From positions 62,001 through 126,000 of the IMG/VR virus record IMGVR_UViG_3300030019_000003: 64,000 nucleotides of DNA; one strand, given 5' to 3'. Shown here one piece after another: positions 1-61,538 of the stretch. A model generated the notes under the pieces. The model had not been told where the DNA came from. It ran no database searches and saw only the letters and a list, made by a program, of their open reading frames with translations. A program made the translations under genes and the position numbers. Each line of letters starts with the position of its first letter. Position 1 is the first letter of the stretch.

Positions 1-2748
1 TATACACCAGTAGTAGGCGATAAACTCTATACCGATACAGCTGAAGAATTTGAAGTAAAATCGTTTACAGCAAATGTCACTGTTGATCTTACAAATGTAA
101 TATCCGGGGCATGTGGTTCTGATTATACAATGTTATTAAAAAGTAATGGTGACCTGTATGCAGCTGGATCTAACATGTATGGTCAATTAGGTTTACCCGA
201 TACTATTGCTGGAGTAGAATATTTTACATTAGTAACAACGGGTGTTAAACAAGTAAGCGCTGGTCTCTATCATACTGTTATTGTTAAAAATGATGGTAAG
301 GTTTATGTTACAGGAAGAAATAACTTTGGGCAACTAGGGTTAGGAGATAATGTAGATAGGCACGGTTTTACAGAATTGAGTATTGGTAGCTTACTTACAG
401 TATTTGCTTTTGATAATCAAATAGCTGTATTAAGAACAACAGGTACCGTTGCAACATGTGGGTATAACATGGGTGGCGAGTGTGGTGTAGGTGACCTTAG
501 TAACAAGATGGCTCTTACGGAAACAAACCTAACAGGTATTACCTTTATTGTTGTAACAGGTAGTGGTATAGCATGTCTTGATGCTGCTGGTAATGGATAT
601 GTTACTGGATTAAACACACAGGGTATGTTAGGTACTGGAAATACTACTCCAACAACTACTTTTATTAAAACAAGTACTACAGGTTTATTAAACTTAAGCA
701 TAGGCTATACTCATGGGTTGTTTGTAAAAGCAGATGGTACAGTAGTAGTTGTAGGTTCAAATACTTATGGACAAATTGGTCAAGGCGTGTTACCTAGTTC
801 AAGTGCGCTATTAACATTACCTATTACTAATATTAAAAAAGCATTTGCCCCTAGATGGAGTAGTTTACTATTAGCTAATGACGGTAGTGTATATGCAGCT
901 GGATTTAATAACTTTGGTCAAACTGGCCTAGAAGTTACAACTGCTAATATTACAGCATTTACATTAACAGGATATAAAGCTTCTGATATCATAGCTGGTC
1001 CAAACCATACATTAGTTATTAAAGCAGACGGGTCAATACTTTTATTTGGACTAAATGCAAGTAACCAACTTGGTTTTAAATCAAGAGATATTAACAAGAT
1101 TTATATTAACACACCAAGTTTGTATTATCCGGATATGTATGTTACACCTGTTACTAACTTGGGACATGTACCTATTGGTGTACATCGTAAAGATGTTACT
1201 ATTATAGCAGAGCCAGTTGTTCAAAATACAGGTGATTCTGATTTTTCAGCTGTTAATGATTGTGTTATTTCAGAGTCTACTCGTAATGTGATAGACAGTA
1301 CATTACAATCAACGGCTAATAAGCTTTACATCAATAACCAGTATGTTGACTTAAAACTAGGTCAGCAACTTATAACTGAGAATAACGAAATTATTACCAT
1401 AGGTAATATTGGTAGTGATGGTTCTGATACTGCTATATCTGGTATCAAAAGTATTATAGGTGCTACTTCAGGTGTGTTTGCTATTAAAGAAAACTCTGAG
1501 CTTTGGTATATAGGTTTAAACATCTACGGTGAAGCTGGTGTTGGCCATAATAGTAATCTAACGGAATGGGCCTATTGTGGTATTAAAGTTAGTTCAATTG
1601 CTACAGGTAAAGGATTTACATTAGCCATTAGAGATACTGATGGAATGGTTCTTAGTGCAGGTATTAATGTTTATGGCCAATTAGGACTAGGTACCGTTAC
1701 TGATACTAATATCTGGAAAGAATCTAATTTTTATGCAACTCGTGTAGCTGCTGGTAATAACCATGCTTTAGCACTAGATCTACAAGGATTACTTTATGCT
1801 GTAGGTTTAAATAATCATGGACAACTTGGTATTAACTCATCTACTATTCTTAATAAGACCGTGTGGACAGCTTGTGTTCTTCCTCCTACTGTTTATACTG
1901 TAGCTGCTAGAATCTATTGTGGCGGTGATAGTTCTTACGTTATTAGAACAGATAGTGTGTTATATTCAGCCGGTAGAAATGATTATGGTCAATTAGGTAT
2001 TAACACTACTACGGATGCTTTGTCATTTACGAATACGAGTGTTAGTGCCCTAGATATGGCAGCAGGTGATTACCATATTGTTGTTATTAAGGTTAATAAT
2101 AAACTCTTTGGTTGTGGTCTTAATGATAAAGGGCAGTTAGGTATTGGTGTTGTTGGTAATAAGTCAGTACTCGTAGATTTAGGATTAACTGCTAGTAAAG
2201 TATTTTGTAATGCTAATGGTAGTTATATTAGAAAACTTGACGGTACATGGGCATACTCAGGTATTAATACGTATGGTCAATCTGGAAATGGGTTAACAGC
2301 TAATATCTTTACATGGTATACACCCGTTATTGTTCCTAAATATATTGCGTGCATGGGTTTGTCAACTATGGTTATTACTGAAGATGGCCTATTCTACGCC
2401 ACTGGTAATAACGATGCTGGTCAATTTGGTAAACCTGAAATAGATGTTACTTTAACATGGGTAAAGTTATCGGTAACTAAACCATTTTTAGGTATGTGCA
2501 AAACAGGTTACTGGATAGCTCCTAAAGTAACTATTGCAAGAATACCACAAGCAGTGTACCCTATTAGTAGAGTATCCTTTAATGGTGTAGTAGCAAGTGC
2601 TAAAGAGGGTACGTATAACACCCCAAATGTTACTGTTATTTTAGAAGATACAGAGTTTTCAAACTCTAGAACACTAACAACATCTGTCGATATTCCGTAC
2701 ACTAACAGAGTGTATAAAATATTAGGCACTGTTTCAAAAATAAGTTGA
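1..2748 (+). CDS. RCC1-repeat tail fibre / receptor-binding-like protein (5'-partial, two RCC1 propellers)
   Basis: Frame is open from base 1, so the true start lies upstream; many G-x-N-x-x-G-Q-L-G and AG-x-x-H repeats; tail-module context. Confidence 0.8.
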   Translation, partial: YTPVVGDKLYTDTAEEFEVKSFTANVTVDLTNVISGACGSDYTMLLKSNGDLYAAGSNMYGQLGLPDTIAGVEYFTLVTTGVKQVSAGLYHTVIVKNDGKVYVTGRNNFGQLGLGDNVDRHGFTELSIGSLLTVFAFDNQIAVLRTTGTVATCGYNMGGECGVGDLSNKMALTETNLTGITFIVVTGSGIACLDAAGNGYVTGLNTQGMLGTGNTTPTTTFIKTSTTGLLNLSIGYTHGLFVKADGTVVVVGSNTYGQIGQGVLPSSSALLTLPITNIKKAFAPRWSSLLLANDGSVYAAGFNNFGQTGLEVTTANITAFTLTGYKASDIIAGPNHTLVIKADGSILLFGLNASNQLGFKSRDINKIYINTPSLYYPDMYVTPVTNLGHVPIGVHRKDVTIIAEPVVQNTGDSDFSAVNDCVISESTRNVIDSTLQSTANKLYINNQYVDLKLGQQLITENNEIITIGNIGSDGSDTAISGIKSIIGATSGVFAIKENSELWYIGLNIYGEAGVGHNSNLTEWAYCGIKVSSIATGKGFTLAIRDTDGMVLSAGINVYGQLGLGTVTDTNIWKESNFYATRVAAGNNHALALDLQGLLYAVGLNNHGQLGINSSTILNKTVWTACVLPPTVYTVAARIYCGGDSSYVIRTDSVLYSAGRNDYGQLGINTTTDALSFTNTSVSALDMAAGDYHIVVIKVNNKLFGCGLNDKGQLGIGVVGNKSVLVDLGLTASKVFCNANGSYIRKLDGTWAYSGINTYGQSGNGLTANIFTWYTPVIVPKYIACMGLSTMVITEDGLFYATGNNDAGQFGKPEIDVTLTWVKLSVTKPFLGMCKTGYWIAPKVTIARIPQAVYPISRVSFNGVVASAKEGTYNTPNVTVILEDTEFSNSRTLTTSVDIPYTNRVYKILGTVSKIS

Positions 2749-2756
2749 GGTGATAA

Positions 2757-5700
2757 ATGGTTACTGAACCAGTATTTGTAATAAAAAATGAAGATGCCGA
2801 AGCAGGCATCGCTTTAAAAATAAACCCGGATGCTGTTAGACCTGTTTATACCTTACCTCCGGAGACAGGTATTCTTATAACAAAAGAATCTGTAGTTGCA
2901 AATGTTAATTCTCTTGTAGATGCTAATGAAAAAGAATTAGTATCTATTACTAAACCGGTGATTCTTTCACCGGTCAGTGGTAAAGAATATAATCAAACAG
3001 GAATTCATTCTACACAGTATGCATGTAGTGATACCTATCTTGGTAAGCATACTGCTAGTGATTGGGAAGTGGCTACAGACTTTGATTTTAATAATATTGA
3101 AGTTAGTAGCTATAAAGATAGTTTAAATAAAACAACTTTCTTATTTACAGCAAAACAGCATCAAGCTACTTACTACGCTAGAGTACGTTATCGTTCCGAT
3201 AACTTCTTAAGTGCGTGGTCAAGTGTGGCTAGATTTACTTCATCTTCTACATTCATAGGTAATCCTGTGCTAACAGTATCAGGTGATCAAAATGCTGCAA
3301 GTGTTAAACCTACTTTTTATGGTTCAGCTTTTGAAACCTATAATACTACGGATACACATCAAGGTAGTATGTGGGTTGTGAGTACTGATGCTGAGTTTAA
3401 AAATGTAGTTTATTCATCAGGTATTAGTACTACTAATCTATTATCATTAGAGTATCCAAACACATTACTTCCAGATGCTACCTATTATGCTAGGGTTATG
3501 TATTTTGGAGATACTTTAAACAGTTCATGGTCAGATACTATGGTACTTAAAGTAGGCGTTATGATGGATACACCTATCCTTGTAGCAAACGGATATGTTT
3601 ATGAAGGTGGATCTATTGATATTAATATTATTAATTATGATTCAGCTGCTAAATACGATATTTATACAACAGCAGGTGAGTATGTTCGTAATAATGATAT
3701 TGTGACTATCAAGGTTCCTAATAATCTTGTTATTGGTACTGAAGTTGGTGTTACTGTCAACATCATATGCTCTAATGCAACGACAGGAAAGATAGATAGC
3801 TTTCCAGGAGTGTGTAATTTTACTATTTTGAATTATCATACTACTGTAGATCAAAGTATCAGGATAGACGACTCTAACTTTAATTCCTTAGTTTCTAGTA
3901 AATCTACATTATGGATGAATCTAGATACAAATTTGTTCGGTATTAATAATAATATTAAAGATAGCAGTCACGTCTCTACTATTTCAAAATTTTATATCAA
4001 TAATAAAATTTGTGATATCAAAGCAGGTGAAATACTTACTTGTGAGACAGGCGAAACATTCGCAGTTAAGACTGTAGAAGATGACGGCGCCGTTGCAAGT
4101 ATTTATGATATTGTGAAAATAGTATCCGGAATGGGTCATGTTCTGTTATTAACTGCTAATGGTGATGTTTATGCAGCTGGTAAAAATGATAAAGGTCAGT
4201 TAGGTCTAGGTGATAAAATTGATAGACCTAATTTTGTAAGAACCTTTAGAGATGCTAAAGACATTGGTGCTGGCTATTATCATTCTATTGTTCATACAGT
4301 ATTTGGGAATATAAAGTTATCAGGTTATAATATCTACGGCCAATTGGGTAATAGCAGCATATCGGATAGCGTTGTCTGGATTGGGCCAGCTGATGCAATG
4401 CCGACAGTAAAATCATTTAGTGCCGGATTATATCATACTGCCATCATACTAGATGATGGTTTAGGTACATTAATGGTAGCTGGAGGTAATACTGATGGTC
4501 AGCTATGTTCTTTTGTGTCCACAGGTGGTTATAGCGCTACATTTGTTAAGATAACCACAGGTATTGATAAAGTAGTTTCCGGACAGTACCATGTAGCATG
4601 TAAGACAACAGATGGTTATTATGCTGGTTTCGGTAGAAACTTGGAATATCAATTAGGTATGAACATTACTGGTAACAGAATGGTGTTTACTAAATCAACA
4701 ACACATATTAACGATGTGTGGGCTAGTTCAAACTCTACTTATATTACAGATGCTAATGGTGTTCTTTATTGTGCGGGGTTAAATGCTGATGGTCAACTTG
4801 GCACTAACGATCTTATTAATAAGAATGTTTTTGTAACAACGAATCTTATTGTTGATAAAGTCTATCCACAAATGTATGGTGTTATTATTAAAACAATAGA
4901 TGGTATCTTTAAGGCTACTGGTAGAAATACTAGCGGTGAGCTGTTAATAGGTACTAAAGTATCTACTCAGGTATTTACAAATGTTACTGAGAAAGCTTTG
5001 GATGTTATTGGTATTAACGGATATTCCAATCTATTAGTTACAAAAACAGATAAGCATATGTACGGTATCGGTCTTAATAGTAGTTCACAATTTGGTAATA
5101 ACTCTACGCTACCATTGATATCTTTAACAGATATTTATGATAAAACTGTATACGGTTTGTATAAACCAGTATATTGGGTAACACTTGAAACTAACGCAAC
5201 AGTTGTACCAGATCATTTTTATAGATCTGTCGTGCAAACTAATATGACAGATATTATTCAAAATACCGAAGATGATGATTTTGAAAAGATATCTACTATT
5301 ACTACTACGGAGCCGCTAACCAATATTTTAAATACTATGTTGCAGTCTACTGCTGATAAGATATATATTTCTGATTTACTTAGTAATGTCAAATCTGGTA
5401 ACAAGTTACTAATTAATGATGGCACCGTTATAACTGTAGATACTGTTTCCGATGACGGTTCTATAGTAAATATCCCAACAATTTCTAAAATGATTTCATA
5501 TTCAAATCTAGGAACCTATGTTGTGATGTTGGAAGATGGATCAGTTTACACATGTGGTAGCAACTGGTATGGTTCCGCGGGAACAGGAAATATAGTAAAT
5601 AGCGCAGGGTGGAATAAACTTAGCATCATAGCTTCAGATATTTTTAATGCGATAAGCGGTGTGTTTGTTGTGCGCAAAAATGATGGAAAAGTATTTGCTT

Positions 5701-53609: not shown

Positions 53610-53873
53610 ATGACGTTTTCAAGAGATAGTGATGTAAGAGTTCCTAATAAGGAATACCTAGAAAACATGGTAGACGATGTCGAAGGATCTATTAAGAAAC
53701 TTTGTAAAGTTGTAGGGAGTAATTTTGAATTAACCCAAACAATAGATAGGTTACAGTTTGATCTTAAGAATGTTTTTCTAGGTCTTAACTTATGTCTTCC
53801 AAGAGATAAACTTAGAGCGAAAGAAGCTATAGAGGATATTGCTATCCGTGTTGCAAGTGTTATAAGAAAATAA
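53610..53873 (+). CDS. Hypothetical protein
   Basis: GAGGG SD. Confidence 0.55.
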   Translation: MTFSRDSDVRVPNKEYLENMVDDVEGSIKKLCKVVGSNFELTQTIDRLQFDLKNVFLGLNLCLPRDKLRAKEAIEDIAIRVASVIRK

Positions 53874-53931
53874 GGTATACTGGTTAACCCACACGGGTTA
53901 ACCAGTATACCTAGTAGTCATTTATTTTTTT
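53873..53931 (+). terminator. 18-bp stem-loop plus T-tract
   Basis: AGGTATACTGGTTAACCC-ACAC-GGGTTAACCAGTATACCT. Confidence 0.8.
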
Positions 53932-54583: not shown

Positions 54584-54714
54584 AATGGCTAATAAAAAAA
54601 GAATCATTTATGTTGATTATCTTTATACTGAGTATGCAATTCTTGATAAAAAGAAATATGATATTCGGCTTATAAACCAAGATTAGTAAAATCTATATAG
54701 TGTAAATAACATTA

Positions 54715-54746
54715 TTACAAGTAACCGTTATAACGGTTACTTGTAA
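54715..54746. terminator. Perfect 32-bp palindrome
   Basis: TTACAAGTAACCGTTA|TAACGGTTACTTGTAA, followed by promoter-like AACATATTAT at 54758. Confidence 0.65.
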
Positions 54747-54802
54747 CTACATTTAACAACATATTATTTATATATGTATATAATAAAACCAAGGAGTAAA
54801 CC

Positions 54803-55551: not shown

Positions 55552-56490
55552 ATGCAAGATAACTTTGTATTACAGGTTACGCTGTTAAAAGATGGCGAGT
55601 TATTATACGATGAAGATATCCACGCCACGGTGCTGCATGGATTAGTCTTTGCCGGGATAGGCTGCGATACCTCTATTAACAAAAGTGTTTCAGAGTCGGC
55701 TATTATAATCGATCTAGACAAAAAAGGAAACTTTAAGTACAAAGGCGTACTTAATGGTGTAGCATATACTGTGCCTTCAATGTTCCTTAATGCAGCTAAT
55801 TTGGCTATGGCTGTTAATAGGCATATGCTAAAAATAAATGATGTAAACTATCTTATGAACGATTTGTACGTACTTAATTTGTATGGTAAAATGAAATACG
55901 GTTTTTCAGATACTAAGAATAGGTCGGGTGAAAACAGTGTTATTATAACACCGTTCTTTTCATGTGTTTATAATATTAGTTCAGCTAAAAATCTTGGTAA
56001 AGTTTTAGCGGTAGCGTCACATTATGCTAGTGTTAATATAGGCGAAGCGCATGGTATTAAAAACGCTTTAATAACCACAAACAGTATAAAATCTGATTGG
56101 TCGCATGCGGACATTTCTAAAAATAAAAACTTCATTATTATTAAAAAACACATTAAGACTGTGATAGATCCGATGGCTACCATCTATAAATTTAAATTTA
56201 GAATGTATAGCCTGTCACTGTCTGACATAACTGCCACAGTACGTTACACGTCTGATAAAAAATATATCATGGAGACTATCACGATAGGTGTTTCTAGCAA
56301 TATCGATACTTATAGCAAAATCCATAATTTTGTTAATAATAATATTGAAGAAAGATATATAGGTTTTTTAAATGGTGTTATAAAATCTATTGCCGGTGAA
56401 ACAAAAATATTAGGCGGTATTAAAAACAAATTTATAAAAGGGTTAGATCAAGTTATAGAAGAGTATAGTACTTTTACGAAATTTAAATAA
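55552..56490 (+). CDS. Hypothetical protein (tandem paralog of 56502)
   Basis: YGFSDTKNRS...FSCVYNISSAK...HYAS. Confidence 0.6.
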   Translation: MQDNFVLQVTLLKDGELLYDEDIHATVLHGLVFAGIGCDTSINKSVSESAIIIDLDKKGNFKYKGVLNGVAYTVPSMFLNAANLAMAVNRHMLKINDVNYLMNDLYVLNLYGKMKYGFSDTKNRSGENSVIITPFFSCVYNISSAKNLGKVLAVASHYASVNIGEAHGIKNALITTNSIKSDWSHADISKNKNFIIIKKHIKTVIDPMATIYKFKFRMYSLSLSDITATVRYTSDKKYIMETITIGVSSNIDTYSKIHNFVNNNIEERYIGFLNGVIKSIAGETKILGGIKNKFIKGLDQVIEEYSTFTKFK

Positions 56491-56501
56491 AGGAAATTCC
56501 T

Positions 56502-57437
56502 ATGATGTATTTGATAATAAGGAATCTAGATAACGATGATAAAAGCCGTGAAGAGTCAGTGGTAGCTACAATACAAGCAGCTGTGGCTACTATAGGTCTT
56601 AAAGAATTGACAGTATCAGATAATTTTGGCTTACTCAAGACAGAAAAAAACTTCATTTATATTTTATACGAAAAAAGTAGTTGTCTTGTTATAAATGTTT
56701 GTATTGGCGGTGTTCTTTCTAGGCAAAAAGGTTGTGAATTGACAGAACTAAATCTTTCTCGTAAACTATCTTTTGCCTTGTCCGATAGTGTTTCTCGTAA
56801 TAAGAAAGGGCTAGATGGTCTAAACCTATTAATAGAAGATAAACATTTTTTTCCAGGTGTAATATTATTATTACCTTATGGTTTTAAGGATCGTAAGTCT
56901 AAAACACCGGACACCATAGAGTTGACAGTCGTTACAAAACATTTCAGGGCAACCTATAGTGTGAGTACTGGGAAAGCATATAAAGAGATCATGTTACACT
57001 ATTCAAATTTGTTAACAAATGAATTTTCTCTTGATCTAGGTATTAAAACTTTTAAGATAGTTCCAAGTGGTATATCATATGATTTTGCTTTTTATACAGA
57101 TACGCCTAACAGCATACGTTTTATGTTAGAAGTAGTTACCACTACAGGAACATCGGAAGATGGTTCATTAACGTCAATATGGTTTGAGCCTGGTCGTTTA
57201 CTATTCGACATAGGTGAATCCAACGGTGAATCTTATCTTGTTGGCGAGTATTATCCGGGTAGAGTTTTACCAGGTGAGACAACTTATAAAATGTTTGCAG
57301 AGGGTTTTGTAAACTTTGCAATACGGGTGCGTAACCATATCGTAACCGAAGCTAACATTCTTGACAATGTTAAGAAACAGTTGTTAGATATATTAGATAT
57401 GGAAATAGAACGTGTTAAGGGGTTTAATAACTTATAA
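56502..57437 (+). CDS. Hypothetical protein (tandem paralog of 55552)
   Basis: YGFKDRKSKT...FRATYSVSTGK...HYSN; 311 versus 312 aa. Confidence 0.6.
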   Translation: MMYLIIRNLDNDDKSREESVVATIQAAVATIGLKELTVSDNFGLLKTEKNFIYILYEKSSCLVINVCIGGVLSRQKGCELTELNLSRKLSFALSDSVSRNKKGLDGLNLLIEDKHFFPGVILLLPYGFKDRKSKTPDTIELTVVTKHFRATYSVSTGKAYKEIMLHYSNLLTNEFSLDLGIKTFKIVPSGISYDFAFYTDTPNSIRFMLEVVTTTGTSEDGSLTSIWFEPGRLLFDIGESNGESYLVGEYYPGRVLPGETTYKMFAEGFVNFAIRVRNHIVTEANILDNVKKQLLDILDMEIERVKGFNNL

Positions 57438-59160: not shown

Positions 59161-60243
59161 ATGGTACTTTTTAAAGATGACTATCAATCCTCTCCAGTTA
59201 TAGATCTGTCTACTAGAAACATAACTTTTCTAGAGTATGCCTATAGTTTAAAAGAGTCAGGTATTAAAAATTGGGCATTCTGTCTAATATTACATAACGC
59301 AGAACTTATAGGCGTAGATCCTTTCTCTAAGGATCTTACTGTATTACAAAAAACCGCTATCATTCTTGAAGCAGCAGAAAATCCGTGGTATTTTTTTAGA
59401 GAGGTTGTTAGGGTACCTGCGCATGGCAATTGCGCGTCTAAATACTTTAAAGCAAATGCGTTTAGTATACCTATACTATGGTCACATCTTGCAGGTATCT
59501 CACTTTTAATTGCTGGGCCGAGGCAGGTAGGTAAATTATTACCTGTTGATATGCTACTAGAGTATAGTATCATTTTATCTGGTTATCATACATCAGAAAT
59601 ACTTTTCAAAGATGATAATATCCGCAGTATAAGTATTCTGACTATTCTAAATAACATAGAATTATTACCGGATTTTTTCAAAAGCAGTGTCACACCTCAA
59701 CATATTAAAGACCCTATAGAAAAATTAGTATGTAAACCTAATAGCACATGTATCAATACTAGTGTTGCAAATCAGATTGCTAAATACGCCGCGTTGGCAT
59801 ATCGCGGACAGACTTTTAATACTTTTGTAATTAGGGATGCCTTATTCGTAAAAAATCTAGATAAGTATATCACCAATGCTTTACCAAGTATGAACTACGC
59901 CAATGAACTTGTTGAGGCTAATTCTTTAGGAGGCATGATTGTTATCACGAACTATGATGATCTTAAACGTAAGGATTCAGAGGGATCTAAATATGTTTAT
60001 GATACCTTTGTTAAAAATCAGCCAGTTTGGGATGATACCCTTTATGATACTTTAAATTGTAACAATATTAAGGATACTTTTACTGTTAAAAAAGATGGTA
60101 AAGCTACGAGGTTGTTTCTTAATATTGATGCTAGTTATGCTAAAATAGGGTTTACGGAAGAAATGGTTAAACAACACATACTTGACAGTTGTATCGATAC
60201 TGAAAAATGCCCGTATGAATTCTTAGACCATTGGGTGATTTAA
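59161..60243 (+). CDS. phiKZ-type terminase large subunit-like protein, ATPase region only, degenerate motifs
   Basis: LFKDDY...GIKNWAFCLILHNAELIGVDPF...ENPWYFFREVVRVP N-terminus; GPRQVGKL Walker A; FVIRD at Walker B; no nuclease domain. Confidence 0.75.
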   Translation: MVLFKDDYQSSPVIDLSTRNITFLEYAYSLKESGIKNWAFCLILHNAELIGVDPFSKDLTVLQKTAIILEAAENPWYFFREVVRVPAHGNCASKYFKANAFSIPILWSHLAGISLLIAGPRQVGKLLPVDMLLEYSIILSGYHTSEILFKDDNIRSISILTILNNIELLPDFFKSSVTPQHIKDPIEKLVCKPNSTCINTSVANQIAKYAALAYRGQTFNTFVIRDALFVKNLDKYITNALPSMNYANELVEANSLGGMIVITNYDDLKRKDSEGSKYVYDTFVKNQPVWDDTLYDTLNCNNIKDTFTVKKDGKATRLFLNIDASYAKIGFTEEMVKQHILDSCIDTEKCPYEFLDHWVI

Positions 60244-60260: not shown

Positions 60261-61538
60261 ATGTTAGAGACACTACTTGCAAGTTATAATGATTTTATAG
60301 AAATATCTAAAAGTAATCCTATGTTAGCAGGTGCTATAGGTTTATGGGGTGCTGGGCTAGTTACGTGGTTAGCACGTAATATACCCAGCAGTATAGGATC
60401 ATTTATAGTGGCACAATTAACAACAAGGATGACGATGACAAATGTCTCGTCATCTACGTCTTGGGATAGCAATGAGTTACAGTTTAACGCCTTCGTCAAA
60501 TGGGTAAATAGCGCTGGGTATATAGGGTGGAGTCGCTCATTCACAATCACAACTGATGAAGATGTTGAACAAACTCCAGTACTTGTATTTGGTTTAGGAT
60601 CACATTTTTTTATTTATAAAGGAATATTCTTTTATATCTTTCGCAGAAGATTAGAGGCGGCCTCCAGTAACCAAGATAAACAGGAAATATCAGTTATTGG
60701 TTTAACACGTAATCGACAAAAACTTTTAGATCTTTATAACGCTTTTAAATACGTAAAAGATTTTAAAGAACTTTGTGTACGTAGCTGGAGAAAAGATGAA
60801 TGGATATACTCCGGATTTATTACCAAGCGGTCAATAGAAACAGTAGCTATAAATGAGAATATCCTTAGTGACATAATGGATAAACTTACCTTTTTTACAG
60901 AACATAAAGAATGGTACACCTCTAGGGGTATGTCTTATAAACAAACATTTCTTCTTCATGGTTTACCTGGTACTGGAAAGACCTCTCTTATCAAGGCGCT
61001 AGCGAGTTATTATAACCGAGATGTCTATACCATTAATCTAGGATTAATGACCGATACAGCACTTAGTAAGGCTATGGCTACTATTCGTAAAAATAGTATT
61101 ATTCTTTTCGAGGATTTTGACGCTAATAAAACAGTGCAAAAACGAAAAGTTAAAGGAGAGTCTATTTCATCTGATGAAATAGAGGTAGAAAGTACTGAAC
61201 CAGAGGAGTATTCGCCGTTGACGTTATCAGGCCTTCTTAATGAGTTAGACGGCATTATCTCATTAGACGATGTGATTGTGTTTATGACAACAAACCATAT
61301 CGAGAATATCGATAAGGCTATCTTACGTAAAGGCAGGGTTAATTTTATGTATGAGATAGGGCTACTTAAAGATGCTGAGATTAAAAAACAGATGATGGTT
61401 TATTATCCAGGTAAAAGTTTGTCTAATGATGTCACATATGAGGATATTGCCGGGTGTAATTTAGAAGCTTTATTCTTAGAGCATACTGATGATTATGAAA
61501 GTTTCTTAAATTCGTTACCACACGCTATTAAAAAATAA
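60261..61538 (+). CDS. BCS1-like AAA ATPase with N-terminal TM
   Basis: GLPGTGKT, ILFEDFD, TLSGLLNELDG, MTTNH, AILRKGRV; BCS1_N-like region. Confidence 0.85.
   Translation: MLETLLASYNDFIEISKSNPMLAGAIGLWGAGLVTWLARNIPSSIGSFIVAQLTTRMTMTNVSSSTSWDSNELQFNAFVKWVNSAGYIGWSRSFTITTDEDVEQTPVLVFGLGSHFFIYKGIFFYIFRRRLEAASSNQDKQEISVIGLTRNRQKLLDLYNAFKYVKDFKELCVRSWRKDEWIYSGFITKRSIETVAINENILSDIMDKLTFFTEHKEWYTSRGMSYKQTFLLHGLPGTGKTSLIKALASYYNRDVYTINLGLMTDTALSKAMATIRKNSIILFEDFDANKTVQKRKVKGESISSDEIEVESTEPEEYSPLTLSGLLNELDGIISLDDVIVFMTTNHIENIDKAILRKGRVNFMYEIGLLKDAEIKKQMMVYYPGKSLSNDVTYEDIAGCNLEALFLEHTDDYESFLNSLPHAIKK

What the first reader, a model, noticed from the sequence alone, without database searches (positions are those of the whole stretch)
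59161..60243. Truncated, apparently ATPase-dead terminase paralog in the accessory/early region
Seen: a phiKZ-type TerL N-terminus, but Walker A is GPRQVGKL (no S/T after K), the Walker B position reads FVIRD instead of hhhDE, motif III is replaced (VITNY), and the 360-aa protein ends before any RNase H-like nuclease domain. It lies among early-type genes, far from packaging genes. Established: Avs1-3 STAND defence proteins sense the terminase ATPase fold. Inference: a repurposed terminase mimic (decoy or inhibitor of terminase-sensing immunity) or a packaging regulator.
Basis: partly seen in the sequence, partly recalled or inferred. Interest (0 to 1): 0.7.

Follow-up and report, generated by a model that had tools for sequence, protein, structure and literature searches.

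The report
Catalytically dead terminase ATPase-domain paralog
A peat jumbo phage related to phiKZ keeps, besides its real DNA-packaging enzyme, a shortened second copy that has lost the residues needed to burn ATP and its DNA-cutting half but is still under selection, so it probably acts by binding rather than by catalysis.

Summary
Window 59161-60243 (+) encodes a 360-aa protein that aligns end to end with residues 1-359 of phiKZ-type large terminases (TerL). It folds confidently (pLDDT 90) as a T4 gp17-type ATPase domain. Walker A reads GKL, against GK[ST] in 139 of 141 TerLs. Walker B reads RD, against DE in 141 of 141. Motif III reads ITN, usually TTT. There is no nuclease domain.

It is not the phage's terminase. 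A complete TerL with intact motifs and a nuclease domain lies 11.4 kb downstream, outside the window. That gene is interrupted by a 439-nt group I intron.

The copy is not a pseudogene. It forms a supported clade with two metagenomic proteins of 359 and 338 aa, at a syntenic locus, all still open although synonymous sites are saturated. It keeps 21 of 22 near-invariant TerL positions in residues 1-125, while the catalytic core has diverged.

A second lineage of similar dead ATPase-only copies sits directly upstream of full-length TerL genes, and a third kind occurs in cultured Vibrio jumbo phages.

Best reading: a non-catalytic TerL-derived subunit that acts in packaging through retained binding surfaces. 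This is inferred, not shown. Nothing supports the Avs-decoy idea, and it is mechanistically awkward. New variant of a known kind; moderate interest.

The parts
59161..60243 (+). Gene for the 360-aa TerL ATPase-domain-only paralog (P0001), a pseudo-ATPase without a nuclease domain
   Evidence: ORF. PHROG TerL families 1e-28 and 9e-25. Aligns to TerL residues 1-359. AF2 model pLDDT 90.2, pTM 0.90. Best PDB match is the T4 gp17 ATPase domain.
59161..59538 (+). N-terminal module (residues 1-126, up to and including the P-loop), the part that keeps TerL-level conservation
   Evidence: 21 of 22 near-invariant TerL positions are kept. Identity to TerLs is 40.5% here against 20.5% in the rest, a ratio of 1.98 against a TerL-TerL median of 1.33 and 99th percentile of 1.78. 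The 15-aa block ENPWYFFREVVRVPA is identical to the phage's own TerL although 10 of its 45 nt differ without changing the protein. pLDDT is 92-98.
59515..59538 (+). Degenerate Walker A, GPRQVGKL (residues 119-126): Arg, Gln, Gly and Lys are kept, the Mg-coordinating Ser/Thr is replaced by Leu
   Evidence: Corresponds to T4 gp17 SRQLGKT.
59824..59838 (+). Degenerate Walker B, FVIRD (residues 222-226): the Asp is replaced by Arg and the catalytic Glu by Asp
   Evidence: DE in 141 of 141 full-length relatives. Column-by-column comparison. Corresponds to T4 gp17 D255-E256.
59938..59958 (+). Degenerate motif III (coupling motif), IVITNYD (residues 260-266), in place of IFTTTAG

Best explanation
Shown: the gene encodes a well-folded copy of only the ATPase domain of the phage's T4 gp17-type large terminase. 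The copy has lost the Mg-coordinating Ser/Thr of Walker A, both Walker B acidic residues in their normal form (DE became RD), the coupling motif, and the entire nuclease domain. The phage has a separate, complete, intron-containing TerL with all motifs. The copy belongs to a small, vertically inherited group of 338-360-aa proteins at a syntenic locus, and it is under purifying selection that is strongest on the N-terminal 125 residues.

Inferred: it cannot hydrolyse ATP or cut DNA, so it works by binding. Because it keeps the TerL-specific N-terminal module and the P-loop scaffold, it most likely contacts what the TerL ATPase domain contacts. That could be TerL itself in the motor ring, the portal, or a still unknown TerS-like partner (no small terminase is known to me for phiKZ-like phages). 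In that way it would modulate assembly, timing or specificity of genome packaging as a non-catalytic subunit or competitor. Non-catalytic paralogs in other ring ATPases, such as clamp-loader delta-prime or F1 alpha, are an analogy.

Its two clade relatives keep GKT and the Walker B Asp and lack only the catalytic Glu (DN). The shared ancestral state was therefore probably a form that binds ATP but does not hydrolyse it, and this copy has degenerated further.
For: Fold and extent.

Motif loss measured against 141 TerLs; mapping onto T4 gp17.

Separate intact TerL: exons at genome 136199-135459 and 135019-133634, which give one 708-aa ORF when joined. The interruption is a group I intron (RF00028, 52.2 bits against a gathering score of 50, E 1.8e-12).

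Selection:
- Clade with P0003 and P0013, SH-aLRT 98.
- The P0013 contig is collinear with genome 90-122 kb of this phage.
- Third bases at 4-fold sites under identical residues agree in only 35-38%, so synonymous sites are saturated, yet all three ORFs are open.
- 21 of 22 N-terminal invariant positions are kept.
- N-terminal to remainder identity ratio 1.98, above the 99th percentile of TerL-TerL pairs.
- An identical 15-aa block with 10 synonymous differences.

Recurrence and a link to packaging: an independent clade of dead ATPase-only copies (P0046 with QKN/ED, P0128 with RKS/DD) sits 70-115 nt upstream of full-length TerL genes, the position a small terminase usually has. All five degenerate copies have lost the catalytic Glu.
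Against: No direct evidence of any interaction: the single complex prediction gave no verdict. No expression data: no RNA run was listed. The immediate neighbours are not conserved among the three clade members, so there is no conserved operon partner. The gene is not next to TerL in this genome. The group is rare: of the 80 loci kept from the IMG/VR scan, only this phage carries it, and no cultured phage has a close copy. It therefore cannot be a general part of the chimallivirus packaging machine. A dead subunit that entered the phage's own motor could be harmful.
Confidence: 0.45

Rival explanations
1. Anti-defence mimic: the dead ATPase domain binds terminase-sensing STAND proteins (Avs1-3) and blocks or diverts them, protecting the real TerL.
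For: It has the TerL ATPase fold, and the Avs3-bound terminase 8dgc_E is among the structural matches, as for any TerL. KpAvs2 is predicted to contact the TerL ATPase domain (PMC11564622). Loss of catalysis would make a decoy harmless to the phage. Patchy distribution is typical of counter-defence genes.
Against: Avs proteins are activated by binding their target (PMC13581612; PMC11564622), so a look-alike should trigger them rather than silence them. The part kept best is the lineage-specific N-terminal module, not the generic fold surface. The independent clade B copies sit directly upstream of TerL, which points to packaging. No paper found describes a terminase decoy.
Confidence: 0.1
2. 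Weapon for competition between phages: a dominant-negative terminase subunit that poisons the packaging motor of a related jumbo phage co-infecting the same cell.
For: Related chimalliviruses are documented to interfere with each other during co-infection (intron endonuclease case reviewed in PMC12908238). A hydrolysis-dead subunit is a classic poison of ring motors (established knowledge, from memory). Distribution is patchy and lineage-specific.
Against: The N-terminal module of all three clade members is closest, or nearly closest, to this phage's own TerL lineage (rank 2, 1 and 1 of 77). That suggests it fits the phage's own partners rather than a rival's. There are no co-infection data.
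Confidence: 0.12
3. The TerL-derived scaffold has been recruited to a job unrelated to packaging, for example a nucleotide-binding adaptor in replication, recombination or phage-nucleus biology.
For: It lies in a block of unknown genes downstream of nucleotide-metabolism genes, beside a conserved AAA+ gene (phiKZ gp285/286 homolog), and not beside structural genes. The Arg, Gln, Gly and Lys of the P-loop are retained.
Against: The neighbours are not conserved among clade members. The best-kept region is the one specific to TerL of this phage group. The clade B copies are physically coupled to TerL.
Confidence: 0.2
4. A duplicated terminase fragment on its way to being lost, with no function.
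For: Catalytic residues are gone and its terminal branch is long (0.87 against a median of 0.54). A far more decayed third remnant exists in the same genome (268 aa, only profile positions 17-88 recognisable), which shows that such copies do decay.
Against: Three lineages with saturated synonymous sites all keep open frames of 338-360 codons that align over nearly their whole length. None of 20,000 shuffles is open. 21 of 22 N-terminal invariant positions are kept. A 15-aa block is identical to TerL with only synonymous differences. The AF2 fold is confident.
Confidence: 0.08

Closest known systems
Large terminase TerL of phiKZ-like / T4 gp17-type phages (phrog_2; T4 gp17 ATPase domain, PDB 2o0h)
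   Same: Homologous over the whole ATPase domain (about 30% identity to the phage's own TerL and to TerLs of Erwinia, Vibrio, Ralstonia and Pseudomonas jumbo phages). Same fold. It keeps the N-terminal module and the Arg, Gln, Gly and Lys of the P-loop.
   Different: No nuclease domain. Walker A Ser/Thr replaced by Leu, Walker B DE replaced by RD, coupling motif TTT replaced by ITN. It evolves about twice as fast outside the N-terminal module. It coexists with a complete TerL.
Other degenerate ATPase-only TerL copies found here: clade B (P0046, P0128) directly upstream of TerL in metagenomic contigs, and CZP2022_112-type genes of Vibrio jumbo phages (C-ZP2022, pir03, BONAISHI, Yong), annotated hypothetical
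   Same: Truncated TerL N-terminal or ATPase copies of about 320-366 aa. All match phrog_32359. The catalytic Glu is lost in P0046 and P0128 as well; the Walker B region of the Vibrio copy could not be aligned with confidence. All keep the N-terminal NPWYFFREV-type module.
   Different: Separate origins in the tree, different motif decay, and different genomic positions: clade B is adjacent to TerL, while this one is 11 kb away.
Non-catalytic paralogous subunits of other ring or oligomeric P-loop ATPases (clamp-loader delta-prime, F1 alpha). Analogy from general knowledge.
   Same: A duplicated ATPase fold that has lost hydrolysis but is retained, presumably for binding.
   Different: No evidence yet that this protein joins a hetero-oligomer. 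As far as my searches reached, no viral packaging motor is known to contain such a subunit.
Group I introns in phage TerL genes (this applies to the genuine TerL, not to the paralog)
   Same: RF00028 match above the gathering score. Inserted between Walker B and motif III. Removal restores one ORF.
   Different: It carries no homing-endonuclease ORF. Splicing has not been observed.

Membership tests
Functional large terminase (TerL, T4 gp17 type) | ASCE P-loop ATPase fold of the terminase type | tested here: met
   AF2 model pLDDT 90.2. The top PDB matches are T4 gp17, P74-26, Sf6, D6E and HK97 TerL. PHROG TerL families.
Functional large terminase (TerL, T4 gp17 type) | Walker A G-K-[S/T] | tested here: not met
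   GKL here, against GK[ST] in 139 of 141 full-length relatives.
Functional large terminase (TerL, T4 gp17 type) | Walker B Asp followed by the catalytic Glu | tested here: not met
   RD here, against DE in 141 of 141. Aligned to T4 gp17 D255-E256.
Functional large terminase (TerL, T4 gp17 type) | Coupling motif III (T/S-T-T) | tested here: not met
   ITN here, against TTT in 99 of 141 and xTT variants in most others.
Functional large terminase (TerL, T4 gp17 type) | C-terminal RNase H-like nuclease domain | tested here: not met
   The protein ends at the position of TerL residue 359. The downstream ORF is an unrelated AAA+ protein.
phrog_32359 (short 'terminase large subunit' family) | Significant match to the profile | tested here: met
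   E 1e-28 over profile positions 9-196 of 210. The other degenerate copies match it as well.
Anti-Avs decoy or inhibitor | Binds an Avs sensor and prevents its activation | not testable with these tools
   No host and no Avs partner are known for this uncultured peat phage. No such family was found in the literature.
Small terminase (TerS) | Small oligomeric DNA-recognition subunit that binds TerL | not tested
   No TerS family hit in Pfam or PHROGs. Only the position of the clade B copies upstream of TerL resembles a TerS gene.
Pseudogene | Neutral evolution and frame decay | tested here: not met
   open frames in three saturated lineages, and region-specific conservation.
Group I intron (in the genuine TerL, outside the window) | Covariance-model match at or above the gathering score, and exon joining that restores the ORF | tested here: met
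   RF00028, 52.2 bits against 50, E 1.8e-12, full-length model match. Joined exons give a 708-aa TerL collinear with Ea35-70 TerL without gaps at the junction. Splicing itself was not observed (no RNA run).

The most novel reading that the evidence does not exclude
Nucleus-forming jumbo phages have repeatedly (at least two or three independent times) evolved non-catalytic TerL ATPase-domain proteins that join or gate the packaging motor. This could be a heteromeric viral packaging ATPase, or a TerL-derived substitute for the small terminase that no one has found in phiKZ-like phages.
Probability: 0.2. Interest if true: 0.8.

Novelty: new variant of a known kind. Interest (0 to 1): 0.55.

Why it matters
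Terminases are treated as single-copy hallmark enzymes of tailed phages, and they are used both as phylogenetic markers and as the target of Avs immunity. A selectively maintained terminase ATPase domain that cannot hydrolyse ATP, arising more than once in phiKZ-like phages, would be the first hint of a non-catalytic accessory subunit in a viral packaging motor. It could also bear on the missing small terminase of this group.

There are practical consequences. Such copies are annotated either as 'terminase large subunit' or as 'hypothetical protein'. They can mislead TerL-based phylogeny, binning and packaging-strategy prediction. Here the real TerL would additionally be missed or called truncated because of its intron.

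Tried and rejected
- megablast of the region against cultured phages found no match.
- The first Rfam scan of 4 kb around the TerL interruption found nothing. Only the 521-nt scan found the intron.
- Population dN/dS was not possible. Three other IMG/VR contigs are 100% identical to the genome. Contigs of four peat runs show no differences over 3.2 kb.
- No RNA run was listed, so neither expression of the paralog nor splicing of TerL could be checked.
- Complex prediction of the paralog against the phage's own TerL ATPase domain, given as its two exon products, returned no verdict (score 0.01). This is neither evidence for nor against binding.
- The sigma-70 promoter and terminator scan showed no enrichment and is uninformative for a phage with its own RNA polymerases.
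- Conserved operon partners were looked for and rejected. The upstream 233-aa gene and the downstream AAA+ gene are absent from the contigs of the two clade relatives, and the AAA+ gene is a general phiKZ-group gene.
- Recent gene conversion with TerL is rejected: the identical 15-aa block differs at 10 of 45 nt.
- Split TerL (the paralog as the N-terminal half of the only terminase) is rejected, because a complete TerL exists.
- Literature searches for terminase decoys, pseudo-ATPase terminases or TerL paralogs in jumbo phages found nothing relevant. The library is incomplete, so this is not proof of novelty.

Full report
**Where the window lies.** The window is bases 62001-126000 of a 252,159-bp IMG/VR virus record with direct terminal repeats, estimated 100% complete. 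It is AT-rich (about 34% GC) and its genes lie almost entirely on one strand. It is an uncultured phage seen in at least 24 peat metagenome runs. It belongs to the phiKZ-like, nucleus-forming jumbo phages:
- Its TerL groups with those of Erwinia, Ralstonia, Vibrio, Pseudomonas and Salmonella jumbo phages.
- It has a chimallin (phiKZ gp54) homolog (E 8e-9).
- It has a homolog of phiKZ gp285/286.
- An SbcD gene followed by ORFs with the sizes and order of phiKZ gp66-gp70 lies next to TerL; only the SbcD gene itself was confirmed by homology.

**The observation.** The ORF at 59161-60243 (+) is real: 360 aa, ATG, starting one base after the stop of the upstream gene. It has no Pfam hit, but it matches two PHROG terminase families (1e-28 and 9e-25). 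By tblastn it aligns over residues 1-359 with the annotated TerL of 315 jumbo-phage records at about 29-30% identity.

I compared the motifs with 141 full-length relatives from an exhaustive profile search.

| Motif | Full-length TerLs | This protein |
|---|---|---|
| Walker A | GK[ST] in 139/141 | PRQVGKL |
| Walker B | DE in 141/141 | FVIRD |
| Motif III | TTT in 99/141, xTT variants in most others | IVITNYD |

A profile-to-PDB alignment puts these on T4 gp17 SRQLGKT and D255-E256. From memory of the T4 genetics (Rao and co-workers), substitutions at these positions, even E256D, abolish function. That is established knowledge and was not tested here.

The protein ends where the ATPase domain ends. 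An AlphaFold2 model (pLDDT 90.2, pTM 0.90) matches best the crystallised gp17 ATPase domain (2o0h, 357 residues, E 2e-10, TM 0.56), followed by other TerL ATPase domains.

**It is not the phage's terminase.** Mapping the Ea35-70 and Vibrio C-ZP2022 TerLs onto the whole genome finds a second, much better copy on the minus strand, 11.4 kb downstream and just outside the window. Residues 1-244 lie at genome 136199-135465 (48.6% identity) and residues 248-691 at 135016-133664 (36.8%). This copy has PRQTGKS, NQVDE, FTTT and the nuclease-domain motifs.

The two pieces are separated by 439 nt. Removing L004 9458..9020 (minus strand) joins them into one 708-aa ORF that is collinear with Ea35-70 TerL without a gap. 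The second piece has no usable start codon upstream of motif III. A focused Rfam scan identifies the insert as a group I intron (RF00028, 52.2 bits against a gathering score of 50, E 1.8e-12, full model), although a broader scan had missed it. The insert also folds better than all 100 shuffles (z = -3.4). The condition 'only TerL, split gene' is therefore refuted.

A profile search of all six frames finds exactly three TerL-like loci: the genuine gene, this paralog, and a badly decayed 268-aa remnant at genome 131909-132715 that keeps only profile positions 17-88.

**It is not a pseudogene.** The closest proteins of similar length are P0003 (359 aa, 31% identity) and P0013 (338 aa) from other metagenomes. 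In a tree of ATPase domains the three form a clade (SH-aLRT 98) on a long stem, separate from all full-length TerLs.

The P0013 contig is collinear with genome 90-122 kb of this phage: homologs of the dNK, dCMP-deaminase and other genes occur in broadly the same order (one local inversion), at 32-70% identity. The locus is therefore orthologous and old.

Several lines point to purifying selection:
- At 4-fold degenerate sites under identical residues the third base agrees in only 35-38%, about what base composition alone gives. Synonymous sites are saturated, yet all three frames are open and align over nearly their whole length.
- None of 20,000 shuffles of the gene is open.
- Conservation is uneven in a telling way. 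Of 52 positions that are at least 90% conserved in full-length TerLs, P0001 keeps 32. It keeps 21 of the 22 that lie in residues 1-125, and it loses the catalytic ones and several between Walker A and motif III.
- Identity to TerLs is 40.5% in residues 1-126, as high as between divergent genuine TerLs, but 20.5% in the rest. The ratio is 1.98, against a median of 1.33 and a 99th percentile of 1.78 for 2701 TerL-TerL pairs.
- The N-terminal modules of all three clade members are closest, or second closest, to this genome's own TerL among 77 TerLs.
- A 15-residue block (ENPWYFFREVVRVPA) is identical in the paralog and the TerL, while 10 of its 45 nucleotides differ without changing the protein. 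That indicates selection, not recent gene conversion.

The two relatives keep GKT and the Walker B Asp and lack only the catalytic Glu (DN), the classical state that binds ATP but does not hydrolyse it. P0001 has gone further.

**The theme recurs.** Two other short proteins from the exhaustive search, P0046 (363 aa; QKN, ED, HTT) and P0128 (366 aa; RKS, DD, PTI), form an independent, well-supported clade nested among full-length TerLs. Each lies 70-115 nt upstream of a complete 761-772-aa TerL on its contig. P0128 is 48% identical to its neighbour, so this is a tandem duplication in that lineage.

Seven of the listed cultured Vibrio jumbo phage records (C-ZP2022, pir03, BONAISHI, four Yong isolates) carry a second place matching TerL. 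In C-ZP2022 it is a 321-aa degenerate N-terminal copy with PRQRGRS, annotated 'hypothetical protein'. All five copies scanned match phrog_32359, as does this paralog.

Other short hits with intact motifs (P0024, P0029, P0134, P0150) sit on short branches next to full-length TerLs. They are most simply first exons or truncated gene calls.

All five degenerate ~340-366-aa copies (P0001, P0003, P0013, P0046, P0128) lack the catalytic Glu, and all keep the N-terminal module.

Close relatives of the P0001 type are rare. Among the 80 loci kept from the IMG/VR scan (85 confirmed relatives), only this phage has it (several contigs, 100% identical), and all others are full-length TerLs. No cultured phage has a close copy of the clade A or clade B type.

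**How it most likely works.** It is shown that the protein lacks the residues for Mg-ATP hydrolysis and has no nuclease domain. It therefore cannot translocate or cut DNA as a terminase does.

The rest is inferred. What selection preserves is the TerL-specific N-terminal module together with the P-loop scaffold (Arg, Gln, Gly, Lys). The likeliest activity is therefore binding to a partner that the TerL ATPase domain also binds: TerL protomers in the ring, the portal, or an unidentified DNA-recognition partner. From memory, TerL N-termini bind the small terminase in lambda and T4, the gp17 ATPase domain faces the portal in the T4 motor, and no TerS is known for phiKZ-like phages. The position of the clade B copies, exactly where a small-terminase gene normally sits, supports a packaging role for this kind of protein.

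Whether the effect is activation, gating or inhibition cannot be decided here. I put about 0.45 on this packaging-modulator reading.

**Rival readings.**
- A role outside packaging on a recycled scaffold (0.2).
- A dominant-negative weapon against co-infecting relatives (0.12). Interference between chimalliviruses is documented (PMC12908238), but the module looks matched to the phage's own TerL lineage.
- The Avs decoy (0.1).
- Functionless decay (0.08).

The decoy idea is weak. Avs sensors are switched on by binding terminase (PMC13581612; PMC11564622 reports a predicted contact with the TerL ATPase domain, co-IP of the whole TerL, and toxicity when the two are co-expressed). The region under strongest constraint is lineage-specific rather than the generic fold. 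No published example of such a decoy was found.

**What could not be done.** No RNA data were available. There is no population variation to use. The one complex prediction returned no verdict. The host is unknown.

**Verdict.** It is a new variant of a known kind, a selectively retained pseudo-ATPase derived from TerL and part of a recurrent but undescribed pattern in phiKZ-like phages. Interest is moderate (0.55). It would be higher if a heteromeric or TerS-substituting role were demonstrated.

Noticed in passing
Outside the window: L004 9020-9458 (-) = genome 135020-135458: The genuine TerL gene is interrupted, between Walker B and motif III, by a 439-nt ORF-less group I intron (RF00028, 52.2 bits, E 1.8e-12). 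Joining the exons gives a 708-aa TerL. A gene caller would report a truncated 257-aa 'terminase' plus a 421-aa hypothetical protein.
   Followed up: yes
Outside the window: genome 131909-132715 (+) = L004 5909-6715: A third TerL-derived ORF (268 aa) in which only the N-terminal module (profile positions 17-88, including ECSENPWYYFREV) is still recognisable (E 5e-9). It may be a further repurposed or decaying copy.
   Followed up: partly
L093 1355-2446 with 2520-4838; L095 606-1706 with 1820-4105: In two metagenomic contigs, an independent lineage of catalytically degenerate ATPase-only TerL copies (363 and 366 aa) lies directly upstream of a full-length TerL, the usual position of a small-terminase gene.
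   Followed up: partly
L010 4081-5046 (-) (Vibrio phage C-ZP2022, CZP2022_112): Cultured Vibrio jumbo phages (C-ZP2022, pir03, BONAISHI, four Yong isolates) show a second place matching TerL. In C-ZP2022 it is a degenerate N-terminal copy (PRQRGRS) annotated as hypothetical. These phages could serve as an experimental system.
   Followed up: partly
window 60261-61538 (+): AAA+ ATPase (PF00004 1e-17, weak BCS1_N-like N-terminus, phrog_7485). It probably starts at the ATG at 60261 rather than the TTG at 60231. It is a homolog of phiKZ gp285/286, which in the phiKZ and PhiPA3 groups is matched as two pieces covering two annotated CDSs, so the gene may be split or intron-containing there.
   Followed up: no
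window 55552-56490 and 56502-57437 (+): Two adjacent ORFs of 312 and 311 aa with no family hits are weak paralogs of each other (23% identity over 120 aa, E 5e-5).
   Followed up: partly
window 53873-53912 and 54714-54747: Two long, nearly perfect palindromes (18-bp and 15-bp stems), scored as terminator-like on the minus strand, lie just upstream of the co-directional gene block that contains the paralog. They may be transcription boundaries.
   Followed up: no
Outside the window: genome 230418-231260 (+) (L099): A chimallin (phiKZ gp54 nuclear shell protein) homolog, 639-aa open frame, E 8e-9. This indicates a nucleus-forming phage.
   Followed up: partly
Outside the window: genome about 131298-131382 and 159345-159429: An 85-bp direct repeat, 96.5% identical, seen as a secondary blastn hit.
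   Followed up: no
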